DNA of 64,000 nucleotides from IMG/VR virus record IMGVR_UViG_3300023296_000874, positions 193,534 to 257,533 of that record. The stretch is one strand, 5' to 3'. This document shows, in pieces, positions 21,903-61,396 of this stretch. The translations under genes were made by a program, and so were the position numbers. A model generated the notes under the pieces. That model ran no database searches, had not been told where the DNA came from, and saw only the letters and a list, made by a program, of their open reading frames with translations. Position 1 is the stretch's first letter. Each line of letters opens with the position of its first letter.

Positions 21903-21960
21903 GTGTGTCTCCTGGTTGGTTGGGAGGACCGGTGCGTACACCTTCTCTCTCCAGGAGAGC

Positions 21961-23793: not shown

Positions 23794-23849
23794 GTGTACC
23801 TCGAATGGGGAGTGCGCTGGAGTGAGTTCCGTGTTCCAACAACGCATCT

Positions 23850-23865
23850 TACAAACGGATTATTA
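23850..23865 (-). promoter_or_regulatory. Putative late promoter motif
   Basis: TAATAATCCGTTTGTA. Confidence 0.7.
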
Positions 23866-26882: not shown

Positions 26883-26925
26883 GATATTTGCCTCCGAAAG
26901 GTTGTCCAACTCGGACGATAGGGGC

Positions 26926-26941
26926 TACAAAAGGATTATGA
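26926..26941 (-). promoter_or_regulatory. Putative late promoter motif (consensus copy) for the scaffold-decoration-MCP transcript
   Basis: TCATAATCCTTTTGTA, 44 nt upstream of ATG 26882. Confidence 0.8.
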
Positions 26942-32549: not shown

Positions 32550-32590
32550 TGATGTGTGACCCGGTAGAGGTGAGCTCGGGACCCCCCGTC

Positions 32591-32606
32591 TACAAAAGGA
32601 TTATGA
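32591..32606 (-). promoter_or_regulatory. Putative late promoter motif (consensus copy)
   Basis: TCATAATCCTTTTGTA. Confidence 0.8.
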
Positions 32607-32614: not shown

Positions 32615-34219
32615 TCAGAAGCGCTCTTCCCCCGCGCTCTCCTTGATTTTCAGTCCAAGGTGCTCAACGACGATATCCAGAAGGTTGGATTTCTCCGCGA
32701 GCTGTCCGCCAATGTCACCCAAGGCGTTTCGAATCGCCTCGTTGAAGTTGGCGTCATTGAGCGTGAATGCATCGCGCTGGAGCTTCTCTTCCACGTCAGC
32801 AGCGTCGATGTTGAAGAGGTCGAGGATGAAGCTCACGGGCAAGCTTCCCTTCTGGTACAGGTCGAACAGGGCGCTGAAGACGTCCTGGTTGTCGGCCAGT
32901 GCCATACGGTTGAAGCTCAGGCGCGGGTAGATGGGCTTGTCGTATCCCCACGCATCCTTCTCCACGAATCCCATCTTGATTGCTACGGGCTTGAAGAGGA
33001 AGTCCTCAACGTACTCCTGAACCATCATGCGGTAGTTCATGAAGCGCTCGTTCATGACGTGCAGGCTCAACCGGTTGCCGGTGAACGTACCTTCGCCAGT
33101 GAGCAGCTCGAGCGTCACGCCAAGGCCAACCATGAGCTGACGGTCCGTGATGTCGTACTCGTTGCTCAGGTCAAGCAGGCGGTCGTTGCTACCGTACTCT
33201 TCCCAGTTCACCTGGTAGTTGGCAACAATGGAGAAGTCAGGGTCCATCAGGGCAAGGTCCACCATCTCGCGGAGCTCATCAACCTGCATTTCGTCAAGCC
33301 CCTCTCCCCACACGACGCGCTTCGGGGTCATGTTGCGGCTTGCGATACTTGTCTGAGCCTGACGTAGCTTGTCGCGGTACAGCAACACGCGCAGGCACCG
33401 TTCCAAAATGGAGGAGCCAAACTTGCTGCGAGGCCTACGCCTACGAGCAAGGTGGTAGCAGAAAGAGCCCTGCATGGGATCGGAGTCCAGGGGGAGGTTC
33501 TCTCCCATCTGGATGTACTCCACGATCTCGGGCGGCATCTTCTCAACCTTGCGCATGGCAAGGGGGTCAACCTGGGCGTCACGCACGGCGCGACGGTCTT
33601 CTTCCGAGGGTACGAACTCGATGTCTACTTCGTCGGAGAAGCTGTAGCCCTTGACGTCAACCTGATCGGTCTCAAGGATGGTGAGCTTGCGCCACCCACG
33701 GTAGTCTTCGCCTTCCTTGTCATCGTCCTCAGCGAAGATGAAGACGTTGCCGTCCAACCAGTAGAGGTGCGTGATCTCGTGCAGGCGTCGTGTGAGCCTG
33801 AGATCATCCACCATCTTCTGAAAGTAGGCCATCACCTTGTCAGCGGTCTCCTTGTCCTCACATTTCGGCTTGGAGAGGCGGACCTTGCTCAAGGGGATCT
33901 CGGTCAGGATGTCGAGTGCCTGCCCAACCATGGGGTCAGTCTCGTAGTAGTGCCTGAACCACTCGTGCTTCTCACGGTCACTCTGAGGCAGCTCGAGGAA
34001 GTCCGTGCTGAGCTGAGGGCTGAAGAAGTTGAATCCAGAGCTCTGGATTACACCACCACCCGGAGCACCAACACGAGTGTTGAACTGTACGCCATTGGTG
34101 GAGCGGGCAACACGCTTCAGACGTCGAGCGATGACTTGATCATTGCCACGTCGGGAGATTGTGGGTCCGGGTGCCGGAGCACCAGATCCACTACTTTCGT
34201 TGTTGTTGTCGTCAGGCAT
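32615..34219 (-). CDS. Portal protein
   Basis: 534 aa near TerL; YYETDPMVGQALD, DGNVF, HLARR...GSSIL, GLGVT.ELL.GEG. Confidence 0.85.
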   Translation of the reverse strand: MPDDNNNESSGSGAPAPGPTISRRGNDQVIARRLKRVARSTNGVQFNTRVGAPGGGVIQSSGFNFFSPQLSTDFLELPQSDREKHEWFRHYYETDPMVGQALDILTEIPLSKVRLSKPKCEDKETADKVMAYFQKMVDDLRLTRRLHEITHLYWLDGNVFIFAEDDDKEGEDYRGWRKLTILETDQVDVKGYSFSDEVDIEFVPSEEDRRAVRDAQVDPLAMRKVEKMPPEIVEYIQMGENLPLDSDPMQGSFCYHLARRRRPRSKFGSSILERCLRVLLYRDKLRQAQTSIASRNMTPKRVVWGEGLDEMQVDELREMVDLALMDPDFSIVANYQVNWEEYGSNDRLLDLSNEYDITDRQLMVGLGVTLELLTGEGTFTGNRLSLHVMNERFMNYRMMVQEYVEDFLFKPVAIKMGFVEKDAWGYDKPIYPRLSFNRMALADNQDVFSALFDLYQKGSLPVSFILDLFNIDAADVEEKLQRDAFTLNDANFNEAIRNALGDIGGQLAEKSNLLDIVVEHLGLKIKESAGEERF

Positions 34220-36051: not shown

Positions 36052-36098
36052 GTTGGGATCTCCCGAAAGGGGGTAGTAGGTGTCTCATCTCAGCCCGG

Positions 36099-36114
36099 TA
36101 CAAAAGGAATATGT
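36099..36114 (-). promoter_or_regulatory. Putative late promoter motif
   Basis: ACATATTCCTTTTGTA. Confidence 0.7.
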
Positions 36115-36125: not shown

Positions 36126-37937
36126 TCAAAAGAACTTGCGCTTGCGCACGTACATGTTCTTGCGTGCTTTCTTGAGCTGGTGCGAACGGTGTGTGGAGTA
36201 GCCCTTGCCGTTCCCACGTAGTCCGGGGTTCCGGTTGCTCATGCCGTGAACCACTCGAGCGAACTTCTTGTCGCCAATGCGTTCCTGAGCGAGCCAAATG
36301 GCGCGGGCCAGGGCGTCAGCCTGATCGTCGAACCTGCCAGGCAGGTTGGGAGCAGCCACCTCAATCTGGTACTTGCTGAGGCGCTTCTCCTGAAGGCTGA
36401 GCAGCTCTTTGATGTAGTCGCAGTGCTCGTCCCCCTCTTCAATGGGCCAATCGAACAGGCGGATCTTCTTGTCGAGCATCAGGAGCTTGAAGGCTTGGTA
36501 CTTCTTGGAGTTCTTGTCGCGGCTGGCGTACTCCATCTCAAACTGCTGGAGTCCGCGCTTGCGGAGTGCCTGCTCAAGAGGAAGGCCTTCTCGCTGGTCA
36601 AAGGAGCCGCGCCAGATGTAGAACTTCTTGCTCAGATCGAAGATCCACTGCGCAATACTCTCGAAGTCAAGCTGGTCCATGTCCTTGTAGGGGCCAACGC
36701 CAGCGTACCGAACGTCCATGTAGTCGAGTACGATCTGGTCGCCCTCAAGATGTACGATGGAGATCGCCGTACCGTTGTTGACAAGCCCGATGTCAACGCC
36801 CATGAAGTGAGGTACGCGAGTAGCGCCGCCACCACGGGGTCGGAGGTCAGGGTCGATGCACTGGAGCAGGTCGTCTTCCCTGCGGATCCAACCGTGGAGT
36901 CGGTCGGAGAACTCAGCTCCGAACTCAACGAGGAAGTTGGCGGGGTCTTCCTTGTACTTCTTGCGGAGGTACTTACCTGCAATCGTGGGGTTGATCTCCC
37001 ACGAAGGTGCCTGGATGCAGAGGCGTCCTTCAGAGCGGCCCTCCATTCCCTGCGTGAACAGCTTGTAGAACTTCCCGGCCTTGTTGAGCGGCGAGGAGAT
37101 GCAGATCACCTTTCCCTCAGGCTCGCCCGTTTTGGGGTCCTTGAAGGTAGCCGTCGAAGGCGTTGCGGCCTCGTAGCACTCTTCAGCGGAGCTCTGGCCC
37201 TCTGCCACGAAGTGAGCAAACTCGTCGAACACGCATACGATGTTGGCGGGTCCACGGAGGCCTCGTCCAATAGCCGGACGGAACAGGAGCTCGATGGATC
37301 CCTTGGCGTCCGGGCCGTAGCGGTCAATGTCGGCCTGGGTACGGAACACCATGCCTTCAGCGGTGTCACTGGCAATGAACGGCTCGAAATAGCGGCACTT
37401 CGTCAGGTAGCCGCGCGCCACGTTGTAGAGCATGGAAGCCTGGCGGGCGCTGGTTGCTACAGCACTGATGCTGATGCGGCCCACTTCGAGCATCTTGTAG
37501 TGGTCGTGCGGATTCACGCGGGCAAGGAGCTTGTAGATCTCGTAGGCGCAGATCATCGAGGTCATTGCTGACTTAGAGCCACGGCGTCCAACCGACAGGA
37601 GGAGGTCGGTGTAGATCTCGCCCTGCTCCTTGACGTTGCAGCGCCCCTCGTTGTGAAGGTAGCGGAGGAACTCCTTCTCGCTGAGCTCGTACTTCAGTTC
37701 CATCATGAACTGGTCGTGTACGGGAATGCCGTGGAAGAGCTTTCCGTCGAGCATCACCTCAGGCTTCTCAATGCTGAGAGGTACGCCGTAGAACAGCTTG
37801 AGTAGCCAACGCTGAGCGGGCCAGAGTCGAGTGTTGAGTCCCCAGGTTGACTCGCAGAACGTGACGATGTCAACGAAGTCCTCGTTGTCCTTGTCAGGCT
37901 TGCTGAACTCCTGGAGGATGGAGGTAACTGTGTTCAT
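36126..37937 (-). CDS. terL: Terminase large subunit
   Basis: Walker A GRRGSKS, Walker B VFDEFAH, ISSP coupling motif, RNase H-like GVDIG and DDQADA. Confidence 0.92.
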   Translation of the reverse strand: MNTVTSILQEFSKPDKDNEDFVDIVTFCESTWGLNTRLWPAQRWLLKLFYGVPLSIEKPEVMLDGKLFHGIPVHDQFMMELKYELSEKEFLRYLHNEGRCNVKEQGEIYTDLLLSVGRRGSKSAMTSMICAYEIYKLLARVNPHDHYKMLEVGRISISAVATSARQASMLYNVARGYLTKCRYFEPFIASDTAEGMVFRTQADIDRYGPDAKGSIELLFRPAIGRGLRGPANIVCVFDEFAHFVAEGQSSAEECYEAATPSTATFKDPKTGEPEGKVICISSPLNKAGKFYKLFTQGMEGRSEGRLCIQAPSWEINPTIAGKYLRKKYKEDPANFLVEFGAEFSDRLHGWIRREDDLLQCIDPDLRPRGGGATRVPHFMGVDIGLVNNGTAISIVHLEGDQIVLDYMDVRYAGVGPYKDMDQLDFESIAQWIFDLSKKFYIWRGSFDQREGLPLEQALRKRGLQQFEMEYASRDKNSKKYQAFKLLMLDKKIRLFDWPIEEGDEHCDYIKELLSLQEKRLSKYQIEVAAPNLPGRFDDQADALARAIWLAQERIGDKKFARVVHGMSNRNPGLRGNGKGYSTHRSHQLKKARKNMYVRKRKFF

Positions 37938-39305: not shown

Positions 39306-39641
39306 CTACTGAGTGGGTTCTACGCCGCCCGTTGATTGCTCAGCGGAGGGTCCGGGGGGAGGTGTACCTGTCTGGTACTCGCTCGGGATGTTGTATCGGG
39401 CAAGGTTGGAGATGTCATCGTAGAGGGGATGGTCTTCAATCTCACTGAGGCGCTTGTCCTCGTGATCCTCCCCCTCAATACCGTCCCGAGAGTCCTCAAG
39501 CATCTTCTGTACTTGCTTGCCTTCCGATTGGAACAGCTCACGCTCATGCTGGGGAATGTCAGAATCGTCGACGAGTCCGTCGCCGTACTCGGGCGCGGCC
39601 TGAATCAAACGGGCGAGGCGGTGTAGGCGGTCAGAGATCAA
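39306..39641 (-). CDS. Small acidic protein with a leader (ISDRLHRLARLIQAA)
   Basis: TTGA overlap with the upstream stop. Confidence 0.6.
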   Translation of the reverse strand: MISDRLHRLARLIQAAPEYGDGLVDDSDIPQHERELFQSEGKQVQKMLEDSRDGIEGEDHEDKRLSEIEDHPLYDDISNLARYNIPSEYQTGTPPPGPSAEQSTGGVEPTQ

Positions 39642-42277
39642 AAGAGCTCTCCCATGGGATCGTCGAACCCAACGTCAAGGTCAACGGCTTCCGCTTCAGC
39701 GTTGTAGTCCACGTCGAGGTAGCCTCCGAGGCCGTACTCCAACGAGGGGTCAATACCTACGGGAGTAGGGTTGCTGAGCTCCTGTGTCACGGTAGGCATC
39801 TCAGGTACCTCTGCCACAACCTGTCGGTCGTACACCTGGCACCTGTTGTTCGCGCTCTTGAACACACATCCGCTGCACTTACCCATCGCCTTCACGTAGG
39901 GAGCGGGGCTGTCTGCAACCTGCTTGGCACCCTGGTCACATGCGTTGTAGGGGCGGGGGTCGATGTAGTGCGCGCCAATGCCTCGGCCATCATCAACCAG
40001 CGCCTGCCGGAGGAAGTTGGCCTCGCTGTTGTAGAGCTCGGGGCTGAAGCTGTTCCGAATCCAGCTCTGAAGTCCGGAGCCCGTAACGCCACGGTTCATC
40101 GCCATCACAACACGCTTCCTGAAGGAAGTACGCTGGGTGGAGCTGATGCGGGCGGGGCGACTCTTCCGAACCACGCTGGCATCCACGGTGGGTACATCAA
40201 CGTCGCCGGGTGCGCGTACATTCACCTTCAGGTCAGCCATGGAGGCCACGAACTTGCGGTCGGCTTCAGCCTTCTTGTACCGAGCGTAGCGCTCCTGCTC
40301 CTGAGCGAGGTCACGGAGTACCTGCTGGCGAGTGCTTGTGCGCTCCTCAACCTGCTGCTTCGCTTCCGCAGCCTTCTCGGTGGAGATCGTGTCGGCCTCT
40401 ACCTCACGGTCGATCAGAGCCATCAACGCGGAAGCGATGCGGGCTTCCTCTCTCTGCGCGGCGGTGCGGAACTGGTCCTGTACCTGCTTCTTGGTCACCT
40501 GCGGGGTGGATACACGGGCAACACGCTCAGGTCCTGCAATAGCAGCCGGGCGCGGGCTCATGTAGGCAGCCTGAACGATGTCCCAGGAGTTGGTCGATCC
40601 AACCAAAGTACGCAGTTCGAGTGCGCGTTCCGAGCTGATTCGCTCATTCATCTCGAGCTTGTCAACCGCCTCACTCGCCTCAATCTCAAACTGGCCGATG
40701 CTGCCGTAGTTGATGAGGGTCAGTGCCGGGAAGTCGCGTGCGGGGTCGGGAGCAGAGCTCGGCCCGCCACATGCGCCGCCACAGCCTTCCTTGAGGAGGA
40801 ACTGAGGGTGGAGCCGGTTGTCGGTGAGGAAGTTCTTGGCCTCGCTGGCGCTACGGAACCCACGCACATCGAGCACCACGTTTCCGAGCAGTCCGGCCAT
40901 CCGAACAATCGGTCGGATGTGGCTACCCGCTGCAACCACAGCAGGGGCACCGAAGCGCTCTACCAAGTGGTTCTGGAGTGCGCTGCCGTGAACACCCTTG
41001 TACGCCGCCTGGTAGGCAGAGCGCACGACGCTGGCGTGCTTCTGAGGGATGGCATGTGAGATGGTCGCAGCCTTGGCATCTACTACCTGCTGCTGGGTCT
41101 GCATCTGCTGAGCGTCATACTTCGGCTGGTAGTCAGCTACCTCAACCGGAGCAAGTACGCCGTGAGCCTCTGCGAGGAGGTCCCGAACATCCACAGAGCC
41201 AATGCGGCTCAGGATACCTTCGGCTGTTTTGGCGTCGAGCGTCCCTGCGTCACGGAGCTGAGCCACCTCAGCGGCGAGCACCTCTTCGGTGTAGGGAATG
41301 TCCTTCACCACCTGCTTCCCAATGAGGGAGCAGCCGCCTTCGCGGTTGAAGTGGCAGCCACTGCACTTGTCCATCTCAAGGATGAACTCAGCGGCGTTGT
41401 GGTGACGGCGGAAGAAGTCGTTGGCGTCGTGGCATGTGCGGAACTGGTCCGGGCGCACGTAGACGCTACCCAGGAGGTTCTGCTCAGAAGCGAGGGTAGT
41501 GATGGCATCGCTGTCCGCGCGGGCAAACCGACGCTCAAGGGAGGCACTCAGACGTCCCTTCGCAGCCATCATCTTCTGGCTGAGGTCCCTGTAGAGGGAA
41601 CGCTCAACGGCGCTCTGGAAGTCAGCGCTCGGCGGCTCGTACTTGCCGGAGGCACGTCGGTCACGCGCTACCTGGGCATTCGCATCTTCCGTCACGTGCG
41701 TGCGGAGGTCACTCGAGTTGTAGTCGCGGTGCGTGCGGATGGGCTGAGCGAGGAAGGCATTGAGTTGGTCGTTCTCTTCCGGCACGGCAGGCAGGTCAAG
41801 GCGAGCGTGATACTCGTCAATCGCACTACCGTCCTGCACCTCGAAAGTCACGTCGCGCTGCATCTGTCCGAGCATGGCGTGCTCGTTGGCAACGCTCTGT
41901 AGCGTCGGTACCAGCATAGCAATGTGGTCTGGGTGAACGTTCTCACGTACCCACGCGGCAAGCTTCGGTGCGTCCCAACCGGCGTGAAGGCGGTCCTTCA
42001 CAGCGCTCGATACGAGGTTGCGTAGCTCAGCATCCTCCATGTGCTCTGTCGATGCCCACTTGTGCTCGCGCACGGTGTCGGGATCAAGAGCAGGAACACG
42101 GTGGACCGTGCCCATGTCGTGATGCGTCCAGGCATCTACGAGGTCAGGGACAGCGTCAAGGTTCTGCCGGGGCAGTCTCTCAACATGGCGGTAAGCCTCT
42201 TCATCTACGTCAAGCCAGTCCAGGTTCGGGACGGGGTTTTCGAAGATGTGGGAGAGATCTCCGGGCTGCTTGGGCAT
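39638..42277 (-). CDS. Large (879 aa) repeat-domain protein with Cys clusters, probably virion internal
   Basis: GAGGAG RBS before ATG 42277; duplicated KCSGC.F....C...QVV motifs. Confidence 0.75.
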   Translation of the reverse strand: MPKQPGDLSHIFENPVPNLDWLDVDEEAYRHVERLPRQNLDAVPDLVDAWTHHDMGTVHRVPALDPDTVREHKWASTEHMEDAELRNLVSSAVKDRLHAGWDAPKLAAWVRENVHPDHIAMLVPTLQSVANEHAMLGQMQRDVTFEVQDGSAIDEYHARLDLPAVPEENDQLNAFLAQPIRTHRDYNSSDLRTHVTEDANAQVARDRRASGKYEPPSADFQSAVERSLYRDLSQKMMAAKGRLSASLERRFARADSDAITTLASEQNLLGSVYVRPDQFRTCHDANDFFRRHHNAAEFILEMDKCSGCHFNREGGCSLIGKQVVKDIPYTEEVLAAEVAQLRDAGTLDAKTAEGILSRIGSVDVRDLLAEAHGVLAPVEVADYQPKYDAQQMQTQQQVVDAKAATISHAIPQKHASVVRSAYQAAYKGVHGSALQNHLVERFGAPAVVAAGSHIRPIVRMAGLLGNVVLDVRGFRSASEAKNFLTDNRLHPQFLLKEGCGGACGGPSSAPDPARDFPALTLINYGSIGQFEIEASEAVDKLEMNERISSERALELRTLVGSTNSWDIVQAAYMSPRPAAIAGPERVARVSTPQVTKKQVQDQFRTAAQREEARIASALMALIDREVEADTISTEKAAEAKQQVEERTSTRQQVLRDLAQEQERYARYKKAEADRKFVASMADLKVNVRAPGDVDVPTVDASVVRKSRPARISSTQRTSFRKRVVMAMNRGVTGSGLQSWIRNSFSPELYNSEANFLRQALVDDGRGIGAHYIDPRPYNACDQGAKQVADSPAPYVKAMGKCSGCVFKSANNRCQVYDRQVVAEVPEMPTVTQELSNPTPVGIDPSLEYGLGGYLDVDYNAEAEAVDLDVGFDDPMGELF

Positions 42278-42470: not shown

Positions 42471-43015
42471 CAGAGCTCACCATCACGTGCTTCGAGGTAC
42501 TCGTTGTACCCTTCGATGAGCCTTCGTGCTGTCCCATCCACAAGGGATTCGGTACCGGTCAGAAGGTGGTCCATCAGCTTGGTCAAACCGCGTGGCGATA
42601 GCGCCCCTGTACCAAGGATACTGAGTTCAAGTGCGGATGCGTGAACTGCGTCTTCTACTACCTCAAGCGCCAGTGCTGGTGCATGTACGGCGAAGAAGTC
42701 TCTACTCTGATTCTTTCGGATGGTCTGTGTGAGCGCTCTATTGAGGTGCGCGTTCAATCTTGAAGTTGCAAGTACGAGCACGCTGCTTCTGAGCTCTGCG
42801 TCGAACAGAGTATCGAACTGGTCATCAGCACCCGTGAGGTTGCGCTTCAGGATTGCTCCCTCGTCGTCCTCGATGTCACCCCGACCCTCGTCCTCGTTCC
42901 AGGAGCCGTAGGGGCCTGGGCCGTAGCCACGCTCACGAACGGCGGGTCCGGACTGCGGCTGTGTGCCGAAGCTCCGTTCCGAAACCATTCCGCCCCATGC
43001 CTTACGATCCTTCAT
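42470..43015 (-). CDS. Hypothetical protein
   Basis: GAGGAG RBS before ATG 43015. Confidence 0.65.
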   Translation of the reverse strand: MKDRKAWGGMVSERSFGTQPQSGPAVRERGYGPGPYGSWNEDEGRGDIEDDEGAILKRNLTGADDQFDTLFDAELRSSVLVLATSRLNAHLNRALTQTIRKNQSRDFFAVHAPALALEVVEDAVHASALELSILGTGALSPRGLTKLMDHLLTGTESLVDGTARRLIEGYNEYLEARDGEL

Positions 43016-43550
43016 TGACGATCTCCTCAATGAACTCGTCTTCGGCGTAGCCCTCGGGGTCTTCCTTGATCTCCTCTACGTCCTCGATGATCTCCTCAAC
43101 CTGCTCCTTCTGCTTCTTGGGTAGGTTGTCCTTGATCTCACGCCAGTGCGGGGCGTTCACCTCGTCGAACAGGGTGTCCTGCACTCCGCTCAAGGTGTTC
43201 AATGCGTTGGTCAGCTCCGCACGCATGTCGGTGACGCTCTTGTTGTAGCCCATGCCCCCGAGCTTGCCGTCAGGGGAGAGGTTGAAGCTCTTGATCCGGC
43301 TGAAGGTGTCAACCACGGAGCTTGTGTGGCCGAGTGCAACTGATACCTGCCAGAGCAGCTTGGTCAAGGTGACATAGTCTTCCTTGCGGAAGTTGTGGTT
43401 CTCAAGGAAGTCTCGGCCTGCGCTGAGGTTGTCCTTGATGTGGCGAATTTCACCTGCGGTTCGCATCAGCGAAGCACTGCGCTCCAGCGGAGTCTCAATG
43501 AACTCTGCTGCCAACTTCTCTGCCGCCGCGATGTCGTCGAAATCAGACAC
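43002..43550 (-). CDS. Hypothetical head-region protein
   Basis: GAGGT RBS + GTG; leader EKLAAEF...RSAS.MRTAG; SPDGKLGG.GY motif. Confidence 0.7.
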   Translation of the reverse strand: MSDFDDIAAAEKLAAEFIETPLERSASLMRTAGEIRHIKDNLSAGRDFLENHNFRKEDYVTLTKLLWQVSVALGHTSSVVDTFSRIKSFNLSPDGKLGGMGYNKSVTDMRAELTNALNTLSGVQDTLFDEVNAPHWREIKDNLPKKQKEQVEEIIEDVEEIKEDPEGYAEDEFIEEIVNEGS

Positions 43551-43557
43551 ATCCACC

Positions 43558-44382
43558 TCAGTAGTTGAGTACGTCGCCCTCGTAGAGGCGCTCAATGACG
43601 TCCTGGCCGTCTGCATCCTTGGTGAGCTTCCAGAGGTCCCGGTCGCACTTGTGGATCAGCATGTCGTTCCCTACGCGAAGGAACTGAGTCAGATCGCCGA
43701 AGGCCACCTTGCGCATCGAGCCGGTCCGTACCTTGCTGCTCGCCTGCTTCTTGATCTCAACCGCGCGCCGCCCAATGTTGCTCTCCTTGAACTCAAGCTT
43801 CTGCTGGAGCAGGTACGTGTGGGAGTCGTGGCTGTTGGCAAGAGCCTGGATGAAGTCGTCCAGTCCGAGAGGCATCACGCCGGAGGTCTTCAGGCTGTCG
43901 TACACCGTCTGAGCGGCCTTCTGGAAGTCCTCTTCGGCCTGTAGGGCGCGGCGGAAGGGGCATTCGATCTGCTCCCAACGGGAAACCCAATCCATAGCCA
44001 CTCGGAGCAGAAGCACCGGCTCGAGTACTTGTGCGCCAAGGTAGCCAGCAGTCTTCTCGGCAAGGCCATCAATCTCAAGCGTTGTGTTCTCGTAGAGGCG
44101 CTGGAACATCAGATGGTCGCCGTAGAAGCCATCCGATCCAACCTGCCAGTGTGCGTGGCGGTAGATCCAGTCCTGGGCACGTAGTAGGCCCAAAAGTCCA
44201 ATCATGCTGGAGCCGAGTACACGGAGCTGATCCTCCGAGCCGCTGATGTAGGCAGTCTTCCCCTCGGTCTTGCCGCCAAGGAAGGTGTCGAATGCGGGAT
44301 TGGAGAATGCGTCGTGGATACCCGTGGCGTCCGTCTTCATCTCAGCAATCGCCGCCTGTAGGTCGCGATAGATGTCGTTCAT
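43558..44382 (-). CDS. dps: Dps/ferritin-like domain fused between extra N- and C-terminal segments
   Basis: HAHWQVGSDGFYGDHLMFQRLYE...IDGLAEK ferroxidase signature. Confidence 0.85.
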   Translation of the reverse strand: MNDIYRDLQAAIAEMKTDATGIHDAFSNPAFDTFLGGKTEGKTAYISGSEDQLRVLGSSMIGLLGLLRAQDWIYRHAHWQVGSDGFYGDHLMFQRLYENTTLEIDGLAEKTAGYLGAQVLEPVLLLRVAMDWVSRWEQIECPFRRALQAEEDFQKAAQTVYDSLKTSGVMPLGLDDFIQALANSHDSHTYLLQQKLEFKESNIGRRAVEIKKQASSKVRTGSMRKVAFGDLTQFLRVGNDMLIHKCDRDLWKLTKDADGQDVIERLYEGDVLNY

Positions 44383-44422
44383 GAATGGCTCCACGAGAGG
44401 TGATACGTCAGAGGTGCAGGTC

Positions 44423-44438
44423 TACAAATGGAATATGA
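44423..44438 (-). promoter_or_regulatory. Putative late promoter motif heading the long minus-strand structural run
   Basis: TCATATTCCATTTGTA, 41 nt upstream of ATG 44382. Confidence 0.75.
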
Positions 44439-44489: not shown

Positions 44490-45113
44490 ATGTACGACCT
44501 TGTATTCGCCATGCTGTTCGAGGAGGAGCCCACGCTCGAGTGGAAGAGCGGACCGGATTTCGTGAATGGATGGTGGTTCCAAGGCTGGCCTCCTACAGAG
44601 AGCCCGGCCATACGACGTCACGGCTGGCACTTCGCAGACCCCGTACAGGGACATGCTGCTTGTGGCAGTAGCGGAGGGGTGAGGCACAGCGCACCCTTCC
44701 CCGGCGTAGAGCACAGCTCAGGGCTCTTCGGCTTTGGGGTACGCGAGCGACACCTCGCGTTATGCGACATGTGTGAGGCATCTGCTAAAGGATGGATGTC
44801 AGAAATCCCCATCATGGACATGCCGGACCAAGCGAAGCTCCTGAAGCCTTCAAGGGCTTACTGGATGGTGCAATCAAACCTGTGTCGTGCCGCCTACATC
44901 CTCAACCGGATAGAGGTAACTGACATCTGGTACCCTTCGGTGCGTGATCATCTGCGAGCCGTCCTCGAGCCGATTTCGGAAGACCTTTTCAGAGACGCCT
45001 CCTCCGATAGAAAGGCGTCTAACGGGTATCACGGATACGACAGCGAGATGAAAATAGACCGCGACCATCAGCGCCTGTGGAACCTCATCACCCAGCGCCT
45101 GGAGAACTCATGA
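44490..45113 (+). CDS. Hypothetical protein
   Basis: AGGGAG RBS; ATGA coupling to nadD. Confidence 0.6.
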   Translation: MYDLVFAMLFEEEPTLEWKSGPDFVNGWWFQGWPPTESPAIRRHGWHFADPVQGHAACGSSGGVRHSAPFPGVEHSSGLFGFGVRERHLALCDMCEASAKGWMSEIPIMDMPDQAKLLKPSRAYWMVQSNLCRAAYILNRIEVTDIWYPSVRDHLRAVLEPISEDLFRDASSDRKASNGYHGYDSEMKIDRDHQRLWNLITQRLENS

Positions 45114-45745
45114 GTACCGCCCTTGACGCCCGCACCGATCCAGCTACCAAGAAGCGCGTAGCTCTGATTGGGGGCTCCTTCCACCCGCCCACTCTGGACC
45201 ACGGCAACGTCGGACAGGAGCTGCTGCGGTTGGGCCTCGTGGATGAGGTGTGGTACGTCCCTTCAGCCAACCACCCCTTCGCCGCTACTCAGGACAAGAA
45301 GAAGAACATGCTGCCGATTGAGGATCGCGGTGAGATGTTGTGGAGTATGATCTCCAAGTTCCCTGAGAAGGACCAGATGAGCGTCACGTTCATCGAGCAG
45401 ACGGCAGACCTCAGCGGCTACACCTGGGAAACCGTCGCGGCCTTGAAGGCGCAGTACGGACATGACTTCTACTGGGTGATGGGTACCGACTGCGTAGATG
45501 ACTTGTCCAAGTGGAGCAAGGTGCCCTGGTTGCTTGAGAACGTGACCTTCATCGTGTACCCGCGTGGTGGCTACCCTGATGGCATCGGCGGGTACTGGAC
45601 CCCGCTCAGGGCCGAGCATGTGGTGATTGCACGCGAAGACGTGAAGGAGACCTCCGGCAGCAGCTCGGAGGCTCGCGAGAACCCTGATGGTGGACTGCTT
45701 GACGTTGACGTCGCTACCTTCTGGAAGGGGAAGCACTCCGTTTAG
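45110..45745 (+). CDS. nadD: Nicotinate/nicotinamide mononucleotide adenylyltransferase-like
   Basis: GGSFHPPTLDH, YTWET, WVMGTD..L.KW, SSSEAR. Confidence 0.85.
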   Translation: MSTALDARTDPATKKRVALIGGSFHPPTLDHGNVGQELLRLGLVDEVWYVPSANHPFAATQDKKKNMLPIEDRGEMLWSMISKFPEKDQMSVTFIEQTADLSGYTWETVAALKAQYGHDFYWVMGTDCVDDLSKWSKVPWLLENVTFIVYPRGGYPDGIGGYWTPLRAEHVVIAREDVKETSGSSSEARENPDGGLLDVDVATFWKGKHSV

Positions 45746-45790: not shown

Positions 45791-46438
45791 ATGGATTACT
45801 TGGCAATCGACCACCCCACACGCGAGCTCATCTGCGGGTTGTGTAGGCAGTTCTACACGTTGGGTTGGGCATCGGGTACGGGCGGCGGCATTGCCATCAA
45901 GCACCCGACCCTCGACCAGATTCTTGTAGCTCCGTCCGGAGTTCAGAAGGAGCGGCTCCACCGCTCTGACCTGTTCGTGGTCAACCTTGAGGGCGAGGTT
46001 CTTCAATCTCCCCTGAACCCTACGCTGACGTTGAGCCAGTGCTGGCCCCTGTTCCAGCACGCCTTCGTGAAGCGCGGTGCGGGTGCCATCATCCACTCGC
46101 ACCAGCAGAGTGCCGTACTGGCAAGCCTCTACACGGGCGTCGGGCGGTTTGAGCTCCGGGGTGATTTCTGTGAGATGGTGAAGGGCTTGCGTGGCAAAGG
46201 CTACCATGACTCCGTCGTCATCCCGGTCATCAACAACACGGCCCACGAATGTGACCTTGCAGACAGCCTCGGTGACGCCATGGATAGGCACCCGGACGTG
46301 GATGCGGTCCTTGTGCGGAGCCACGGCATCTATGTCTGGGGTTCTTCTTGGCAACAGGCAAAAACGCAGGCAGAGTGCTTTGACTACCTCTTCAAACTTT
46401 ACGACAGGCTGAACAGCCGCGATTGGAATGGAATATGA
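45791..46438 (+). CDS. mtnB: Methylthioribulose-1-phosphate dehydratase (APIP/Mde1-type)
   Basis: LCRQFY.LGW.SGTGGG, APSGVQKERL, IHSH, EMVKG, NT..E.DL, HGIYVWG.SW..AKTQAEC.DYLF. Confidence 0.92.
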   Translation: MDYLAIDHPTRELICGLCRQFYTLGWASGTGGGIAIKHPTLDQILVAPSGVQKERLHRSDLFVVNLEGEVLQSPLNPTLTLSQCWPLFQHAFVKRGAGAIIHSHQQSAVLASLYTGVGRFELRGDFCEMVKGLRGKGYHDSVVIPVINNTAHECDLADSLGDAMDRHPDVDAVLVRSHGIYVWGSSWQQAKTQAECFDYLFKLYDRLNSRDWNGI

Positions 46439-46899
46439 GAGACCTACAGTGGATTGAATGCAACCGAGGCGAGCTGACTGCTGGCGTGGTTGTGGCGAAC
46501 GGAATCGGATACCAGTACGTTGAGGACGAGTTCGACTCGGCCTTGGACAAGGTGGCGTCCGACAACGGGTACATCCAGCGTGACATGGTGGCACTGAACT
46601 CCAGCACCGACGGGCTTGACCCCTTGCTGCAGAAGTTCTTCGAAGAGCATCGCCATGACGAGGACGAGGTACGCTTCGTGGTGGAAGGTGAGGGCACCTT
46701 TGACATCCGAGATGCAGACAACAGTACTGACGGATGGATGCGAGTCACCGTAGAGAAGGGTGACCTGGTTGTGGTTCCTGCTGGGCGCTACCACCGCTTC
46801 GCACTGACGGAGAGTCAGGACATCAAGGCAGTCCGCTTGTTCAAGCGTGCTGAGGGCTGGAAGGCTGAGTTTCGTCAAGTCGAACTGCCCTTCTCGTAA
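46435..46899 (+). CDS. mtnD: Acireductone dioxygenase (cupin)
   Basis: FFEEHRHDEDEVRF..EG.G.FD.RD...W.R....GDL..VPAG.YHRF. Confidence 0.92.
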   Translation: MRDLQWIECNRGELTAGVVVANGIGYQYVEDEFDSALDKVASDNGYIQRDMVALNSSTDGLDPLLQKFFEEHRHDEDEVRFVVEGEGTFDIRDADNSTDGWMRVTVEKGDLVVVPAGRYHRFALTESQDIKAVRLFKRAEGWKAEFRQVELPFS

Positions 46900-50532: not shown

Positions 50533-51099
50533 TCACCTTTCGAGAGCTACCTTCTTGCCGTGGTTGCGCTCATCCTTCACCCAACGCCAGAAGCGTCCGA
50601 TGGGGAACGCTTTGTGCTCACCCTCGCGGTAGAAGCCCGGTCGAGGGTAGTGCTTCTTGTAGGCCCCGATGGCTTCCTCTACAGAGTCGAAGCCGATCAT
50701 CACCTTGTCCTCATCGAACCCGCCGTCAGGCATGTGCTGGTGAATGACAAGCACGAGTGAGCTGTCGTGGTTGGGGCCAACGTACACGTCAAGCAGGTCG
50801 CCGTCTGTGGCCTCTGTCCCCCTGATCTCGCCGTAGTGGTGGTGCATGTAGCGCCTCCACTTCTTGCCTTCAGGGTTGGTCTTCTCGCGGTACTGTCCGG
50901 CCTTGACCTCAATGTCAATCTCAAGCCCTTGGAAGTCCACGTAGCCAACGAACGGCTTCTTCTTGGCTGGCTCGACCTTCACCTTGTGGAACGAGTGCGG
51001 CACCTCAACGATGCCATCGTCAGAGGCTACACGCGCGGGACTCAGACGCATCCGAGCCGCCACGTTCGCAAGGTGGTTGATTGTGTCCTGGGTTACCAT
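50533..51099 (-). CDS. Inorganic pyrophosphatase-like domain (phage/polyvalent-protein InPase type)
   Basis: IEVKAG..R, M...YGEIRGT...DGD.LDVYVGP, FDEDKVMIGF...A...Y..HY. Confidence 0.85.
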   Translation of the reverse strand: MVTQDTINHLANVAARMRLSPARVASDDGIVEVPHSFHKVKVEPAKKKPFVGYVDFQGLEIDIEVKAGQYREKTNPEGKKWRRYMHHHYGEIRGTEATDGDLLDVYVGPNHDSSLVLVIHQHMPDGGFDEDKVMIGFDSVEEAIGAYKKHYPRPGFYREGEHKAFPIGRFWRWVKDERNHGKKVALER

Positions 51100-53911: not shown

Positions 53912-53937
53912 GGGACCTCCTTACGAGGGACAGCCCC

Positions 53938-53953
53938 CACAAAAGGATTATGT
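53938..53953 (-). promoter_or_regulatory. Putative late promoter motif (its TAA is the asnB stop codon)
   Basis: ACATAATCCTTTTGTG. Confidence 0.7.
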
Positions 53954-55716: not shown

Positions 55717-56508
55717 TCAGCTCTCCAAGTAGCGTTCATAGATGGATCCCTCAAGCACCTTTGCGACCGCATCGTAGTTGCGGATGGCGTCCTTCAGCGG
55801 CAGTCCAATCTTCTGGTACGCCGGTCGAGCCACGAATTCGCGCGGTACGTCAAGATGGTCAGCAAAGCTCTGGAGGGTGCTCTCAGGCACCTCACCATCT
55901 ACAAACAGGGTCTCGTAATGCACGGTCAAGGCGATGGGTTCAAGCACCGCCTCCCAGTGCTTCTGCTCGCGCCGTAGCTTACCGAGCTTGTCCAGCAGAT
56001 TGCCCAGAGGCAATTCCACTGTCCGGTCCTTCATCTTGTCCGGGTTGGGTGTCGCCCACACCTTCGTCCGGGTAGAAAGCTCCGCTGATACCAGCATCGC
56101 CAACACGTTGTCTCGCACCAGGTGGATGATCTTGAAATCGTGCCGGATCAGGAGGTCAAGCAGTGGGGAATGCTCCATGCGTACTGCGCCGGGCGTCATG
56201 GCTCCCCTCAGGAAGTCGTACTTGCAGTCGAACAGGATGAGATCTACGTCCCCGCTCAACCTACGCAGGTAGTTGAGGTACCCACCGAACAGTCCGGAGA
56301 CGTTGGCGAGGGTTGGAATGCACAGGCTCGGATTCTTCCGAACGCGCCCATGGAGATACTTGTAGTAGCCTCCGAGCTGCTCGTAGTCCTTGGGAATGAA
56401 TACCTCTCCGAAGGTCTGGATCTCTGGGTTGGTTGACATGACGGACCTCAGGACGGTTGTACCGCTCCTTTGCGTACCGACGATGACTGCGAATCGGGGC
56501 AAACCCAT
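55717..56508 (-). CDS. Sulfotransferase (Stf0-like)
   Basis: GTQRSGTT 5'-PAPS loop; IHLVRDN.L...VS. Confidence 0.85.
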   Translation of the reverse strand: MGLPRFAVIVGTQRSGTTVLRSVMSTNPEIQTFGEVFIPKDYEQLGGYYKYLHGRVRKNPSLCIPTLANVSGLFGGYLNYLRRLSGDVDLILFDCKYDFLRGAMTPGAVRMEHSPLLDLLIRHDFKIIHLVRDNVLAMLVSAELSTRTKVWATPNPDKMKDRTVELPLGNLLDKLGKLRREQKHWEAVLEPIALTVHYETLFVDGEVPESTLQSFADHLDVPREFVARPAYQKIGLPLKDAIRNYDAVAKVLEGSIYERYLES

Positions 56509-56518
56509 TGACGATCTC

Positions 56519-57055
56519 CTACTTTCGTACACTGAACTGGATGCGCATTTCCTTGACGGAGTTCATGTAGTGCCTGCGTGCGAAGTCCTTGTCCTTCTGC
56601 GGCAGATCCTTGAACTCGTCCTCATACGTGTAGTCGATGCTGATGGTCTTGAACAGGTCCTGGAACATGCCCCCTGAGAAGATGCGCTCGTTGAGCATGG
56701 TCACATGCCCCGGCACAATGGAGGTCTCGTGGGTCCAGTAGGGGAACCACCAATCCAGCTTCGTACCCGGAGCACACACGCGCCAAATCTCCCTGTAGAG
56801 CCCGCCGTAGGCTCCTTGAGGGATGTGTTCGATGGTGTGGTAGCTGTACACCTGAGTCACGGAGTTGTCCGGTAGAGGGATCAGCTTCGTAGCGTCGCAG
56901 ATGATGTCGACGTCCGGGTAGTCTCGAATGTCGATGCCGACGGAGCCCTTGTAGTGCTTGCGGTTGCCCACGCCCAGGTCCAGAAGGATGCCCTCTGTCC
57001 CGAACTCCGTGGTGATCTTGTCTCTGTACTTGGGGTTGGTCTTATCCGGTAGCAT
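56519..57055 (-). CDS. SAM-dependent methyltransferase (type 11-like)
   Basis: LDLGVG, GIDI, LPDNSV..VYSYHTIEH, EIWRVC.PG. Confidence 0.85.
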   Translation of the reverse strand: MLPDKTNPKYRDKITTEFGTEGILLDLGVGNRKHYKGSVGIDIRDYPDVDIICDATKLIPLPDNSVTQVYSYHTIEHIPQGAYGGLYREIWRVCAPGTKLDWWFPYWTHETSIVPGHVTMLNERIFSGGMFQDLFKTISIDYTYEDEFKDLPQKDKDFARRHYMNSVKEMRIQFSVRK

Positions 57056-59381: not shown

Positions 59382-60415
59382 AGGAGCCCTCCCAGGTCAG
59401 GCGGCATCAGAACGGAGTGATGGTCGAGGACGTACTTCTGGAGGCTGTCCCCGTAGGATCGGCGCTCCTGAGGACGGTCAATGAGCCTCTGGATGTAGTG
59501 GTCCCATTCCTCCGGCGTCCGCGCCTTGTGAACCACTGAGGATGGAATGTCTCCGAGTGCGCCGGTTGGTGACACCACGCTCGGGATGCCAAACACTCCG
59601 GATTCGATCACCTTGACGATGCTCTTGCAGCGGTTGAACCTCGTGTCCTCAAGGGGTACAAGGTTGATGTCGAACAGGGAGTTCAGAGTCAGCGGTAGGA
59701 GCTGTGGGCGCACATGCTGCCACTTCCAAAGCCGGTACTTCGGGTACCACTTCTGCTCAAACTCCGGCGCAAGAGGCAGCTCGCCAATGATGTGCAGGTC
59801 CACGTAGTCCCTGCTCTCCATGATGCGGTCCAACACTGGAACGATCAGAGCGAAGTCCTTGCGGTGCGTCCGGGTGCCGGAGGCGTATCCGATGTTCACG
59901 CGGCTTGGGTCACGTAGAGCTCTTCCGGTCTGCGCCAGGCGGGCTACGTGCTGCTCAATCTTGTTCCGAACCACGTAGACGGTCTTCTCCGGCCAGCGTA
60001 GACGCACCTCCTCAGCGAGCCGGTCGGTAGACACGGTCACAAACTGAGCCCATTCAACAGCCGCCGCTACACCCTCACTCTTCTCCTGGTCGTAGACTGC
60101 CCCCTCAGGAACAGCGTCAACGTCCCACACCAGGTCGTCAAGGTCGTACCCGTAATGAGCAGCCTCTTCGGCCACCCTATCGAAGTGGTGTGCGTTGGCC
60201 TGAGTCAGCGGGATGCGCTGTACGATGGTGGTACTACCCGGAATGTCCGTCCAAGGCGTTGTCGGGGGCGACGTCACCCACCAGTGCGCTGGATCAAAGC
60301 CGATCCAGCAGACAGCTTGGTGCCCGTGGCTGATGAGGTGGCGATGCACGGTGAACGCGCGGTACCTCGAGCAGCCAACGAACTCATCATCTTCTGCAAC
60401 CCAAACGAACTTCAT
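59378..60415 (-). CDS. GT-B (GT4-like) glycosyltransferase
   Basis: DLDDL, IGYASGTRTH..D, DINLVPL...FN.CKS..K..E. Confidence 0.85.
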   Translation of the reverse strand: MKFVWVAEDDEFVGCSRYRAFTVHRHLISHGHQAVCWIGFDPAHWWVTSPPTTPWTDIPGSTTIVQRIPLTQANAHHFDRVAEEAAHYGYDLDDLVWDVDAVPEGAVYDQEKSEGVAAAVEWAQFVTVSTDRLAEEVRLRWPEKTVYVVRNKIEQHVARLAQTGRALRDPSRVNIGYASGTRTHRKDFALIVPVLDRIMESRDYVDLHIIGELPLAPEFEQKWYPKYRLWKWQHVRPQLLPLTLNSLFDINLVPLEDTRFNRCKSIVKVIESGVFGIPSVVSPTGALGDIPSSVVHKARTPEEWDHYIQRLIDRPQERRSYGDSLQKYVLDHHSVLMPPDLGGLL

Positions 60416-61395: not shown

Positions 61396-61396
61396 C

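What the first reader, a model, noticed from the sequence alone, without database searches (positions are those of the whole stretch)
43558..44382. Dps domain embedded in a late protein and flanked by putative cleavage sites
Seen: an intact Dps ferroxidase signature, preceded by about 45 aa ending GKTA and followed by KKQAS...RKVA plus a separate domain of about 45 aa (FLRVGNDMLIHKCDRDLWKL...VIERL). It is the first gene after a late promoter. Known: Dps forms 12-mers that sequester iron and protect DNA. Inference: Dps has been inserted into a small virion protein so that it is packaged and released by the protease, protecting packaged or injected DNA from Fenton chemistry or delivering iron.
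Basis: partly seen in the sequence, partly recalled or inferred. Interest (0 to 1): 0.65.

Follow-up and report, generated by a model that had tools for sequence, protein, structure and literature searches.

The report
Dps mini-ferritin inserted into phage protein
A huge uncultured phage carries a Dps-type iron-oxidising, DNA-protecting domain spliced into the middle of a small, clade-specific late protein that heads the DNA-packaging operon; the splice is real, but packaging into the virion and release by a protease remain untested.

Summary
Window 43558-44382 (- strand) encodes a 274-aa protein. Its middle (about residues 41-205) folds as a Dps four-helix bundle with all four ferroxidase ligands (H78, H90, D105, E109).

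The insertion idea is supported. The N-terminal 40 residues and the C-terminal beta domain together form a small protein that exists without Dps (98-102 aa). One such protein sits at the orthologous locus of a related phage.

- The C-terminal domain is an uncharacterised module. It has 298 relatives, lies at the extreme C-terminus in every hit inspected, and occurs in at least 134 viral contigs of up to 620 kb.
- Its gene is followed by a homologue of the next gene (w204) in 77 of 80 loci.
- In more distant relatives a free Dps-like gene lies two genes further down the same TerL-proximal operon. Here that slot is empty.
- A promoter-like motif shared with the capsid-protein operon lies 40 nt upstream.

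Virion packaging is plausible, because phage G packages a Dps-like protein, but it is untested. Protease release has no support: RKVA lies inside the conserved C-domain and GKTA is the first residues of the insert. Three fused lineages have lost the iron ligands, so a structural role may matter as much as catalysis.

Verdict: a new variant of a known kind, of moderate interest.

The parts
44422..44437 (-). Promoter-like motif (CATATTCCATTTGTAG), 40 nt upstream of the start codon
   Evidence: 12 matches with up to 2 mismatches in the window, all on the - strand, against 0.05 expected. The same motif precedes the MCP operon at 26925-26940. It also precedes the orthologous genes in L011, L008 and L009.
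44389..44392 (-). Shine-Dalgarno-like GGAG, 6 nt before the ATG
   Evidence: Read from the sequence.
43558..44382 (-). Coding sequence of the 274-aa fusion protein (P0001), stop codon included
   Evidence: Full-length homologues P0002-P0005 are 47-59% identical.
44263..44382 (-). Recipient N-terminal part, residues 1-40: helix 2-17, a disordered stretch, and the short motif AFDTFL at residues 30-35 (44278-44295)
   Evidence: Model. The same helix and motif occur in the Dps-less proteins P0028, P0029 and P0034. The motif class is found in 80 of 149 C-domain proteins, against 14 in shuffled sequences.
43768..44262 (-). Inserted Dps-like core, residues about 41-205. Ferroxidase ligand codons: H78 44149-44151, H90 44113-44115, D105 44068-44070, E109 44056-44058
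   Evidence: Dps fold. Ligands aligned to Dps and invariant in the family. 44-50% identical to free-standing phage Dps-like proteins.
43705..43770 (-). Basic linker, residues 205-226, net charge +7
   Evidence: Lower model confidence, pLDDT 62-76.
43561..43716 (-). C-terminal beta domain ('C-domain'), residues 223-274
   Evidence: A profile search gave 298 relatives at E <= 1e-3; the domain lies at the extreme C-terminus in every hit inspected and ends its ORF in all 80 IMG/VR loci. 134 IMG/VR contigs carry it. Five short strands in the models. No known fold was matched.
43002..43556 (-). Downstream partner gene 'w204'. A GTG start lies 1-7 nt after the stop of the fusion gene, so translation is probably coupled
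   Evidence: Sequence. A homologue follows the C-domain gene in 77 of 80 IMG/VR loci and in all nine loci where downstream sequence was available to check. No family match.
39638..42277 (-). Conserved large (about 879 aa) Cys-rich repeat protein of the same operon
   Evidence: Homologues at the syntenic place in L002, L004-L007, L010 and L011.
36126..37937 (-). Large terminase, last gene of the transcription unit headed by the fusion gene
   Evidence: PHROG terminase hits. Homologues carry PF27249. The next promoter-like motif lies at 36098-36113.

Best explanation
The gene encodes a Dps-type mini-ferritin core spliced between the two conserved elements of a small late protein found in this clade of huge phages. 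Those elements are an N-terminal helix plus a short FD.FL-type motif, and a C-terminal beta domain.

**Shown**
- The Dps fold and intact ferroxidase ligands.
- The mosaic architecture and the existence of the Dps-less form.
- The constant pairing of the C-domain gene with the next gene (w204).
- The position as first gene of the unit that ends with the large terminase, behind a promoter-like motif shared with the capsid operon.
- More distant relatives keep a free Dps-like gene two genes further down that same operon, and that slot is empty here.

**Inferred**
- The core still assembles into a 12-subunit cage. Both its ends emerge on the outside, as in known Dps, so the cage would display twelve copies of the N-motif, the basic linker and the C-domain.
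- The C-domain acts as a docking module that takes the cage wherever the small protein normally goes. This is most likely the head-assembly or DNA-packaging machinery, and so next to the DNA being packaged or inside the head.
- There the cage would oxidise and store Fe(II) and coat DNA, limiting Fenton damage.
- No proteolytic release is needed for this.
For: **Fold and ligands**
- establish the Dps fold and the conserved ligands.

**Mosaic architecture**
- The C-domain profile finds 298 proteins of 58-1249 aa, and the domain is C-terminal in every hit inspected.
- P0028, P0029 and P0034 equal the N part plus the C part without Dps.
- P0029 is followed by a w204 homologue.
- Ten 50%-identity cluster representatives from independent samples share the fused form.

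**Relocation within one operon**
- In L004-L007 the order is C-domain protein, w204, w879, free Dps-like gene, w211, TerL.
- In the window, L002 and L011 the order is fusion gene, w204, w879, w211, TerL.
- The own genome has a single Dps-like copy and a single C-domain copy.

**Gene pair**
- w204 follows the C-domain gene in 77 of 80 loci, and the two genes are 1-7 nt apart here.

**Expression context**
- document the shared promoter-like motif.

**A tag-like C-terminus is general**
- 14 of the 19 free relatives from the first search (P0006-P0024) carry a short Trp motif within about 10 residues of the C-terminus, on tails of 12-225 aa. In IMG/VR loci, 29 of 80 have a Trp in the last 10 residues.

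**Precedent**
- Phage G gp346, a structural match, was detected in particles by proteomics (PMC12484599).
Against: - No cultured relative carries either module. Tunturi_5 lacks the C-domain and did not appear among the hits of a tblastn search with the whole fusion protein, so no virion proteome bears on this protein.
- The function of the C-domain protein and of w204 is unknown.
- The C-domain matches no known fold.
- The one complex prediction gave no verdict.
- Only 20 of 80 IMG/VR loci of the wider Dps-like family have TerL within 5 kb downstream. Linkage to packaging genes is therefore a subclade feature.
- Three fused lineages have replaced the ferroxidase ligands, so iron chemistry is not essential to the fused form.
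- Dodecamer formation was not tested.
Confidence: 0.45

Rival explanations
1. One reading: the fusion protein is packaged in the head, and the prohead protease then cuts at GKTA and RKVA to free a Dps cage inside the capsid.
For: - Both flanks of the core are flexible in the model, with pLDDT 44-65 and 62-76.
- A prohead-protease-like gene lies at 27303-28790.
- BFVD lists entries named 'Prohead protease' among matches to the model.
- T4 internal proteins set a precedent for a targeting segment that is removed (established knowledge).
Against: - RKVA is part of the most conserved stretch of the C-domain profile and adjoins its first strand.
- GKTAY aligns with the N-termini of free Dps-like proteins.
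- Neither tetrapeptide is conserved across the ten fused proteins.
- The protease family, and hence its specificity, is unknown.
Confidence: 0.1
2. The protein is not a virion component. It acts in the infected cell late in infection, sequestering iron and shielding replicating and packaging DNA. The fusion only couples its amount or location to the C-domain/w204 pair, whose role may lie in transcription or replication.
For: - Phage Dps-like genes are usually read as oxidative-stress helpers (PMC8008677).
- In relatives the C-domain gene lies just after a sigma-like factor and clamp-loader genes.
- In LR745208.1 the Dps-like gene is about 70 kb from the TerL module.
- The wider family is mostly not next to TerL.
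Against: - The promoter-like motif is shared with the capsid operon.
- The fusion gene is the first gene of the TerL unit.
- Phage G packages its Dps-like protein.
- Loss of the catalytic residues in three fused lineages fits poorly with a purely enzymatic helper.
Confidence: 0.3
3. The Dps core serves mainly as a self-assembling 12-mer hub that makes the small C-domain protein multivalent. Iron oxidation is a leftover.
For: - P0027, P0030 and P0031 keep the fold and the fused architecture but have lost H90, D105 and E109. P0030 has lost H78 as well.
- These three have very long branches in the core tree.
Against: - In P0001 and six other fused representatives all ligands and W79 are intact.
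- They are invariant in all 19 free relatives examined, which points to selection on the metal site in this lineage.
Confidence: 0.15
4. The fused ORF is an assembly chimera or a frameshift artefact.
For: None found.
Against: The same architecture occurs in ten 50%-identity clusters from JGI, ENA and Logan assemblies, on contigs of up to 71 kb with conserved neighbours.
Confidence: 0.01

Closest known systems
[quoted passage not shown] PDB 1DPS, 8FF9, 2C41)
   Same: - Four-helix bundle with a short BC helix.
- His, His, Asp and Glu ligands, spaced 12, 15 and 4 residues apart (positions 78, 90, 105, 109; counted), plus the neighbouring Trp. They align to the ligand positions of Dps structures; that E. 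coli Dps has the same spacing is from memory.
- TM 0.70-0.80 to solved Dps.
- A basic flexible tail next to the core.
   Different: - Sequence similarity is below the Pfam and NCBIfam cut-offs.
- The core is embedded between foreign N- and C-terminal modules.
- It is encoded in a phage late operon.
- Oligomeric state and activity are untested.
Phage Dps-like proteins (phrog_3636, Pfam DUF5856-like; Lactobacillus phages LP65 and Semele; Bacillus phage G gp346)
   Same: - The same core family: phrog_3636 scores E = 3.6e-5 for P0001 and 5.8e-15 for the fused relative P0026.
- BFVD structural matches.
- gp346 is particle-associated in phage G.
   Different: - Those proteins are free-standing or carry simple tails.
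- Here the core is an internal insertion in another conserved protein.
- Among the 80 best of 134 C-domain contigs and the 80 best of 292 Dps-like contigs in IMG/VR, none has this fused form.
Encapsulin cargo: ferritin-like proteins with a C-terminal loading peptide
   Same: - A ferritin-superfamily oxidase carries a C-terminal address element.
- It is encoded next to genes for an HK97-fold shell.
- Free relatives here carry short C-terminal Trp motifs on variable tails.
   Different: - The address here is a folded domain of about 50 aa, not a short peptide.
- Binding to the capsid is not shown.
- The resemblance is functional analogy only.
T4 internal proteins (IPI-III) with a capsid-targeting sequence removed by gp21
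   Same: A late protein with a short N-terminal helix ahead of the functional part, encoded in a phage that has a prohead-protease-like gene.
   Different: - No sequence similarity.
- No conserved cleavage motif was found.
- The conserved module here is C-terminal.

Membership tests
Dps / mini-ferritin (Pfam PF00210 Ferritin-like domain, Dps subgroup) | Four-helix bundle with a short BC helix | tested here: met
   Model pLDDT is above 90 over residues 50-200. The top 50 PDB matches are all Dps, with TM by target 0.67-0.80.
Dps / mini-ferritin (Pfam PF00210 Ferritin-like domain, Dps subgroup) | Inter-subunit ferroxidase ligands: two His on helix A, and Asp plus Glu on helix B, with the conserved Trp | tested here: met
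   H78, W79, H90, D105 and E109 align to the ligands of Dps chains 2d5k, 1n1q and 3iq1. They are invariant in 24 relatives.
Dps / mini-ferritin (Pfam PF00210 Ferritin-like domain, Dps subgroup) | Score above the curated family threshold | tested here: not met
   PF00210 gives 12.9 bits against a cut-off of 24.5. NF006975 gives 13.3 bits against 114. By sequence models the protein is a distant relative, not a scored member.
Dps / mini-ferritin (Pfam PF00210 Ferritin-like domain, Dps subgroup) | Dodecameric cage, Fe(II) oxidation, DNA binding | not testable with these tools
   Needs expression and biophysics.
Phage Dps-like family (phrog_3636; near Pfam DUF5856) | Profile match over the core | tested here: met
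   - phrog_3636 scores E = 3.6e-5 for P0001 (partial match) and 5.8e-15 over 4-147 of 149 positions for the fused relative P0026.
- DUF5856 is hit weakly by 21 of 24 family members, below its cut-off.
Unnamed huge-phage 'C-domain' protein family (defined here) | C-domain profile match at the extreme C-terminus | tested here: met
   E = 3e-24 over residues 219-272 of 274. The domain is terminal in every hit inspected and in all 80 IMG/VR loci.
Unnamed huge-phage 'C-domain' protein family (defined here) | Gene immediately followed by a w204 homologue | tested here: met
   The window genes are 1-7 nt apart. A w204 homologue follows in 77 of 80 IMG/VR loci.
Unnamed huge-phage 'C-domain' protein family (defined here) | N-terminal short hydrophobic-Asp-x-aromatic-hydrophobic motif | tested here: met
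   AFDTFL at residues 30-35. The motif class occurs in 80 of 149 members against 14 in shuffled sequences.
Substrates of a prohead protease (T4 internal-protein type) | Conserved cleavage motif matching the protease's specificity, flanking the cargo | tested here: inconclusive
   The proposed tetrapeptides are not conserved among the fused proteins. The protease type is unknown.
Virion (head-internal) proteins | Detected in purified particles | not testable with these tools
   No cultured relative carries the gene. The only precedent is phage G gp346.

The most novel reading that the evidence does not exclude
Huge phages of this clade load a mini-ferritin cage into, or onto, their HK97-type capsids through dedicated C-terminal address modules. 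Free Dps-like proteins would use short Trp peptides; this lineage uses the folded C-domain. This would be a phage counterpart of encapsulin cargo loading. The C-domain/w204 pair would then be a general adaptor that brings variable cargo domains to the head or packaging motor.
Probability: 0.2. Interest if true: 0.75.

Novelty: new variant of a known kind. Interest (0 to 1): 0.55.

Why it matters
- Dps-like genes in phages are usually filed as stress-helper genes. Here one has been moved within a late operon into the reading frame of a conserved, uncharacterised protein that always travels with a partner gene next to the terminase. A fusion of this kind suggests that the two products work at the same place.
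- The fusion therefore gives a functional handle on two widespread huge-phage gene families with no annotation: the C-domain protein and w204, found in at least 134 viral contigs.
- It also gives a concrete, testable case of a DNA-protecting iron cage being delivered to the packaging or head machinery.
- If confirmed, it would link phage capsids to the cargo-loading logic of encapsulins.
- The loss of metal ligands in some fused lineages offers a natural experiment on catalytic versus structural roles.

Tried and rejected
- **Complex prediction.** The C-domain (A5) was tested against w204 (A6). Score 0.02, 'no answer'. This is no evidence either way.
- **Word search with residues 197-274.** No small relatives were found. 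The exhaustive profile search then found 298, so the blank was a sensitivity limit.
- **Fold of the C-domain alone.** pLDDT 70.
  - Foldseek against the PDB gave E > 1.
  - VIA-align wide gave Z <= 3.5.
  - The Atlas shape search gave nothing coherent, and the Atlas feature search gave no hit.
  - PDB profile searches with A5 and A6 found nothing.
- **Cultured phages.**
  - No near-DNA match.
  - The only protein hits are in the uncultured 485-kb record LR745208.1.
  - The nearest cultured TerL relative, Tunturi_5, lacks the C-domain.
- **Protease typing.** Pfam, NCBIfam and PDB all failed.
- **Sigma-70 promoter and terminator scan.** Nothing useful.
- **Paralogues of the N or C parts in the own genome.** None.
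- **Is the FD.FL motif a T4-type sliding-clamp-binding motif?**
  - The papers read confirm hydrophobic-acidic C-terminal clamp motifs but give no sequences.
  - The clade's sigma-like proteins do not end in such a motif.
  - This is left as an unverified lead.
- **Partners of large proteins ending in the Dps-like core.** Pfam and PHROGs gave no annotation.
- **Trees.**
  - The C-domain tree has too few columns to decide whether the Dps-less small proteins are ancestral or secondary deletions.
  - The core tree puts nine of ten fused cores on one side of a branch. P0104 sits apart on a long branch, and a single origin is not excluded.

Full report
**What the window is**

The window is the last 64 kb of a 257.5-kb IMG/VR virus record that CheckV rates 81% complete. 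That makes it a huge phage. No phage in GenBank is close at the DNA level.

The - strand carries a head module:
- large terminase at 36126-37937 and portal at 32615-34219;
- a prohead-protease-like protein at 27303-28790;
- the major capsid protein at 24034-24927 (phrog_2522, E = 2e-55).

**The observation**

The ORF at 43558-44382 (- strand) gives 274 aa, stored as P0001. Homologues start at the same Met.

Family libraries barely see a Dps:
- Pfam Ferritin scores 12.9 bits against a cut-off of 24.5.
- NCBIfam Dps scores 13.3 bits against 114.
- phrog_3636 'DNA binding protein' scores E = 3.6e-5.

Other evidence is clear:
- The only PDB sequence hits of note are Dps proteins, and they align H78, W79, H90, D105 and E109 with the ferroxidase residues.
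- An AlphaFold model built on 24 relatives has pLDDT above 90 over residues 50-200.
- That model matches only Dps structures, with TM by target 0.67-0.80 and E down to 1e-4.
- It also matches phage proteins annotated as Dps in BFVD.
- The five residues are invariant in the 24 sequences.

The Dps signature is therefore real, intact and under constraint, although the family is a divergent phage branch near phrog_3636 and DUF5856.

**The flanks are another protein**

A profile of the last 63 residues from five full-length homologues was run against 1.84 billion representatives. It found 298 proteins at E <= 1e-3 and 85 at E <= 1e-10. They range from 58 to 1249 aa, and the domain lies at the extreme C-terminus in every hit inspected.

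Sixty-six of the 149 listed are at most 140 aa long. Three of these, P0028 (98 aa), P0029 (102 aa) and P0034 (101 aa), have:
- the same N-terminal helix beginning M-D-D/N-I-Y;
- the same short FD.FL-type motif;
- a basic linker and the C-domain;
- nothing in between.

P0029 is followed on its contig by a protein 52% identical to the product of the gene just downstream of ours.

The N-side junction residues, GKTAY, align with the N-termini of free Dps-like proteins. The insert therefore runs from about residue 41 to about residue 205.

**The recipient family and its partner**

In IMG/VR the C-domain occurs in 134 viral contigs, many of 200-620 kb. In the 80 loci fetched:
- the domain always ends its ORF;
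- a homologue of the downstream gene (here called w204, window 43002-43556) lies after it in 77;
- in at least 66 of those it lies directly after.

In the window the two genes are 1-7 nt apart, with a GAGG just before the GTG.

Eighty of 149 C-domain proteins carry the N-terminal hydrophobic-Asp-x-aromatic-hydrophobic motif, against 14 in shuffled sequences. The own genome has one copy each of the C-domain and the Dps-like core.

Neither the C-domain nor w204 matches any Pfam, PHROG, NCBIfam or PDB family. The C-domain model, five short strands at pLDDT 70, matches no known fold.

**Where the Dps came from**

| Loci | Gene order |
|---|---|
| L004-L007 (TerL 42-45% identical) | C-domain protein, w204, 700-840-aa homologue of the 879-aa protein, free Dps-like gene (174-293 aa), a ~190-aa gene, w211 homologue, TerL, ..., portal |
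| L010 | Same order, but an 88-aa C-domain protein and no Dps-like gene |
| Window, L002, L011 (TerL 64-80% identical) | Fusion gene, w204, 879-aa protein, w211, TerL |

These orders come (L004-L007, L010) and (window, L002, L011). The old Dps slot between the 879-aa gene and w211 is empty in the window.

The Dps-like gene thus seems to have moved about two genes upstream, into the reading frame of the C-domain protein.

Ten cluster representatives from independent samples have the fused form. In a tree of the cores, nine of the ten lie on one side of a branch (support 86/99). P0104 sits apart on a long branch, and one origin is not excluded.

In a tree of the C-domains, the fused proteins and the three Dps-less small proteins form one clade and are interleaved. 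The 60 columns cannot say whether the small ones are ancestral or secondary deletions. Either way the fused form is derived: about 144 of 154 C-domain proteins, and all 80 IMG/VR loci, lack Dps.

**Expression context**

The motif CATAATCCNTTTGTAG has 12 matches with up to 2 mismatches in the window. All are on the - strand, against 0.05 expected. Most lie about 20-55 nt upstream of start codons.
- One lies at 44422-44437, 40 nt before the ATG.
- The next on this strand is at 36098-36113, just after TerL. The fusion gene therefore heads a unit that ends with the terminase.
- The same motif precedes the operon containing the capsid protein.
- It also precedes the orthologous genes in L011, L008 and L009.

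'Late' is an inference from this association.

**How it probably works**

*Shown:* the fold, the ligands, the mosaic architecture, the relocation within one operon, the fixed gene pair and the shared promoter-like motif.

*Inferred from established knowledge of Dps:*
- The first and last bundle helices end at the same pole, and both termini lie on the outside of the dodecamer. An insertion is therefore sterically easy.
- A cage would display twelve N-motifs, twelve basic linkers (+7 net charge over residues 205-226) and twelve C-domains.

I take the C-domain to be a docking module, for three reasons:
- It is a constant C-terminal end on very variable N-terminal parts.
- Its gene is tied to w204.
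- 14 of the 19 free Dps-like relatives from the first search (P0006-P0024) carry a short Trp-containing motif within about 10 residues of the C-terminus, on tails of 12-225 aa. In IMG/VR loci, 29 of 80 have a Trp in the last 10 residues. That looks like an address peptide.

A fusion of two products of one operon suggests that they act at the same site. The site I consider most likely is the head-assembly or DNA-packaging machinery. There the cage could sequester Fe(II) and coat DNA.

Bacillus phage G sets a precedent. Its ferritin-like gp346, a structural match to our model, was found in particles by proteomics (PMC12484599).

My confidence is about 0.9 for the structural and evolutionary part, and about 0.45 for the whole mechanism.

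**What weakens it**

- No cultured phage carries either module, so nothing shows the protein in virions.
- In the wider Dps-like family (292 IMG/VR contigs), only 20 of 80 loci have TerL within 5 kb downstream.
- That family also shows many other fusions, including ORFs of 350-1040 aa that end in the core.
- Three fused representatives (P0027, P0030, P0031) have replaced H90, D105 and E109, and P0030 also H78. All three sit on very long branches. In some lineages the fused core is therefore kept for something other than iron oxidation, perhaps oligomerisation.
- The one complex prediction, C-domain with w204, gave no verdict.

**The cleavage claim**

RKVA belongs to the most conserved stretch at the start of the C-domain profile, whose consensus there reads RIRVASLGDL. 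It adjoins the first modelled strand. GKTA is the start of the insert. Neither tetrapeptide is conserved among the ten fused proteins.

The protease-like protein hits only PHROG families and could not be typed, so no cleavage rule can be applied. Both flanks are flexible in the model. That permits cleavage but does not indicate it.

**Comparison with what is known**

- Phage Dps-like genes have been noted in Lactobacillus phages and in gut phages, where they were read as oxidative-stress helpers (PMC8008677).
- One is particle-associated in phage G.
- What is new here is the internal insertion into a conserved, unannotated huge-phage protein, with relocation inside the terminase operon.
- Also new is the definition of that protein family and its fixed partner.
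- The closest functional analogy is encapsulin cargo: ferritin-like proteins with a C-terminal loading element and an HK97-fold shell. That is an analogy only.

**Verdict**

| Item | Assessment |
|---|---|
| Observation | Confirmed |
| Insertion | Supported |
| Virion location | Plausible, untested |
| Protease release | Unsupported |
| Novelty | New variant of a known kind |
| Interest | 0.55 |

Noticed in passing
window 6064-6079, 9057-9072, 16340-16355, 17862-17877, 17939-17954, 21960-21975, 23849-23864, 26925-26940, 32590-32605, 36098-36113, 44422-44437, 53937-53952 (all - strand): A 16-nt promoter-like motif, CATAATCCNTTTGTAG, has 12 sites against 0.05 expected. Most sites lie about 20-55 nt before start codons that carry GGAG-type ribosome sites. 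It is probably the promoter class of the phage's own sigma-like factor.
   Followed up: partly
window 45077-45745, 45791-46438, 46423-46899 (+ strand), divergent from the fusion gene: A cytidylyltransferase-like (NMNAT-type) gene, a class II aldolase (MtnB-like) and an acireductone dioxygenase (ARD) form a methionine-salvage-like set. It is conserved beside the fusion gene in L011, and partly in L002.
   Followed up: no
window 39638-42277 (-): An 879-aa protein with internal repeats and Cys-x2-Cys motifs. It is conserved in the operon across the clade. Its L002 homologue shows 36% identity over about 100 residues to the window's portal protein. No family match.
   Followed up: no
P0027, P0030, P0031 (fused relatives; not in the window): The ferroxidase ligands are replaced (H90 to Q, K or R; D105 to E, E or V; E109 to D, S or Q) while the fold and the fused architecture are kept. 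Branches are very long.
   Followed up: yes
P0006-P0023; L093-L111: 14 of the 19 free Dps-like relatives from the first search carry a short Trp motif near the C-terminus (types GWTL, WTPL..D). A further type, MAAWLxEL, appears in IMG/VR loci, where 29 of 80 have a Trp in the last 10 residues. Tails are 12-390 aa long. This may be a docking peptide.
   Followed up: partly
L128, L149-L153, L157-L159 and others: The Dps-like core also occurs at the extreme C-terminus of ORFs of 350-1040 aa that have no annotated partner domains. Once it occurs in a 1387-aa ORF together with an inorganic pyrophosphatase domain.
   Followed up: partly
P0006; L005 4754-5551; L006 15911-16705; the contig carrying P0063: The DUF5661 module (PF18905) is fused in turn to a Dps-like protein, a w204 homologue and an RNA-ligase-like protein. 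It also sits in a 1712-aa multidomain protein that carries PolyA polymerase, PAP2 and topoisomerase I domains. A similar 1745-aa protein in L011 has no DUF5661 hit on record.
   Followed up: no
L008 1274-1567: An encapsulated-ferritin-like gene (PF22277) lies two genes upstream of the Dps-less small protein P0028.
   Followed up: no
own genome outside the window: C1 174844-175752 (+), 184547-185092 (+), 176817-177266 (+), 89840-90106 (-), 13274-13993 (-): Five ORFs end in similar Arg-hydrophobic-Asp-hydrophobic(x3)-acidic tails. From memory, these resemble the C-terminal sliding-clamp-binding tails of T4 gp43, gp33 and gp55.
   Followed up: no
window 50533-51099, 55717-56532, 57057-59381, 60412-61407, 61397-62461 (- strand): An inorganic pyrophosphatase, a sulfotransferase, a GtrB-like glycosyltransferase, an NAD-dependent epimerase/dehydratase and a group 1 glycosyltransferase. 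Together they look like a glycan-modification cluster.
   Followed up: no
L004 12569-15865, L005 9878-12982, L011 17214 to the locus end: Inteins or homing-endonuclease domains interrupt the large terminase (L004, L005) and the portal-like gene (L011) in relatives.
   Followed up: no
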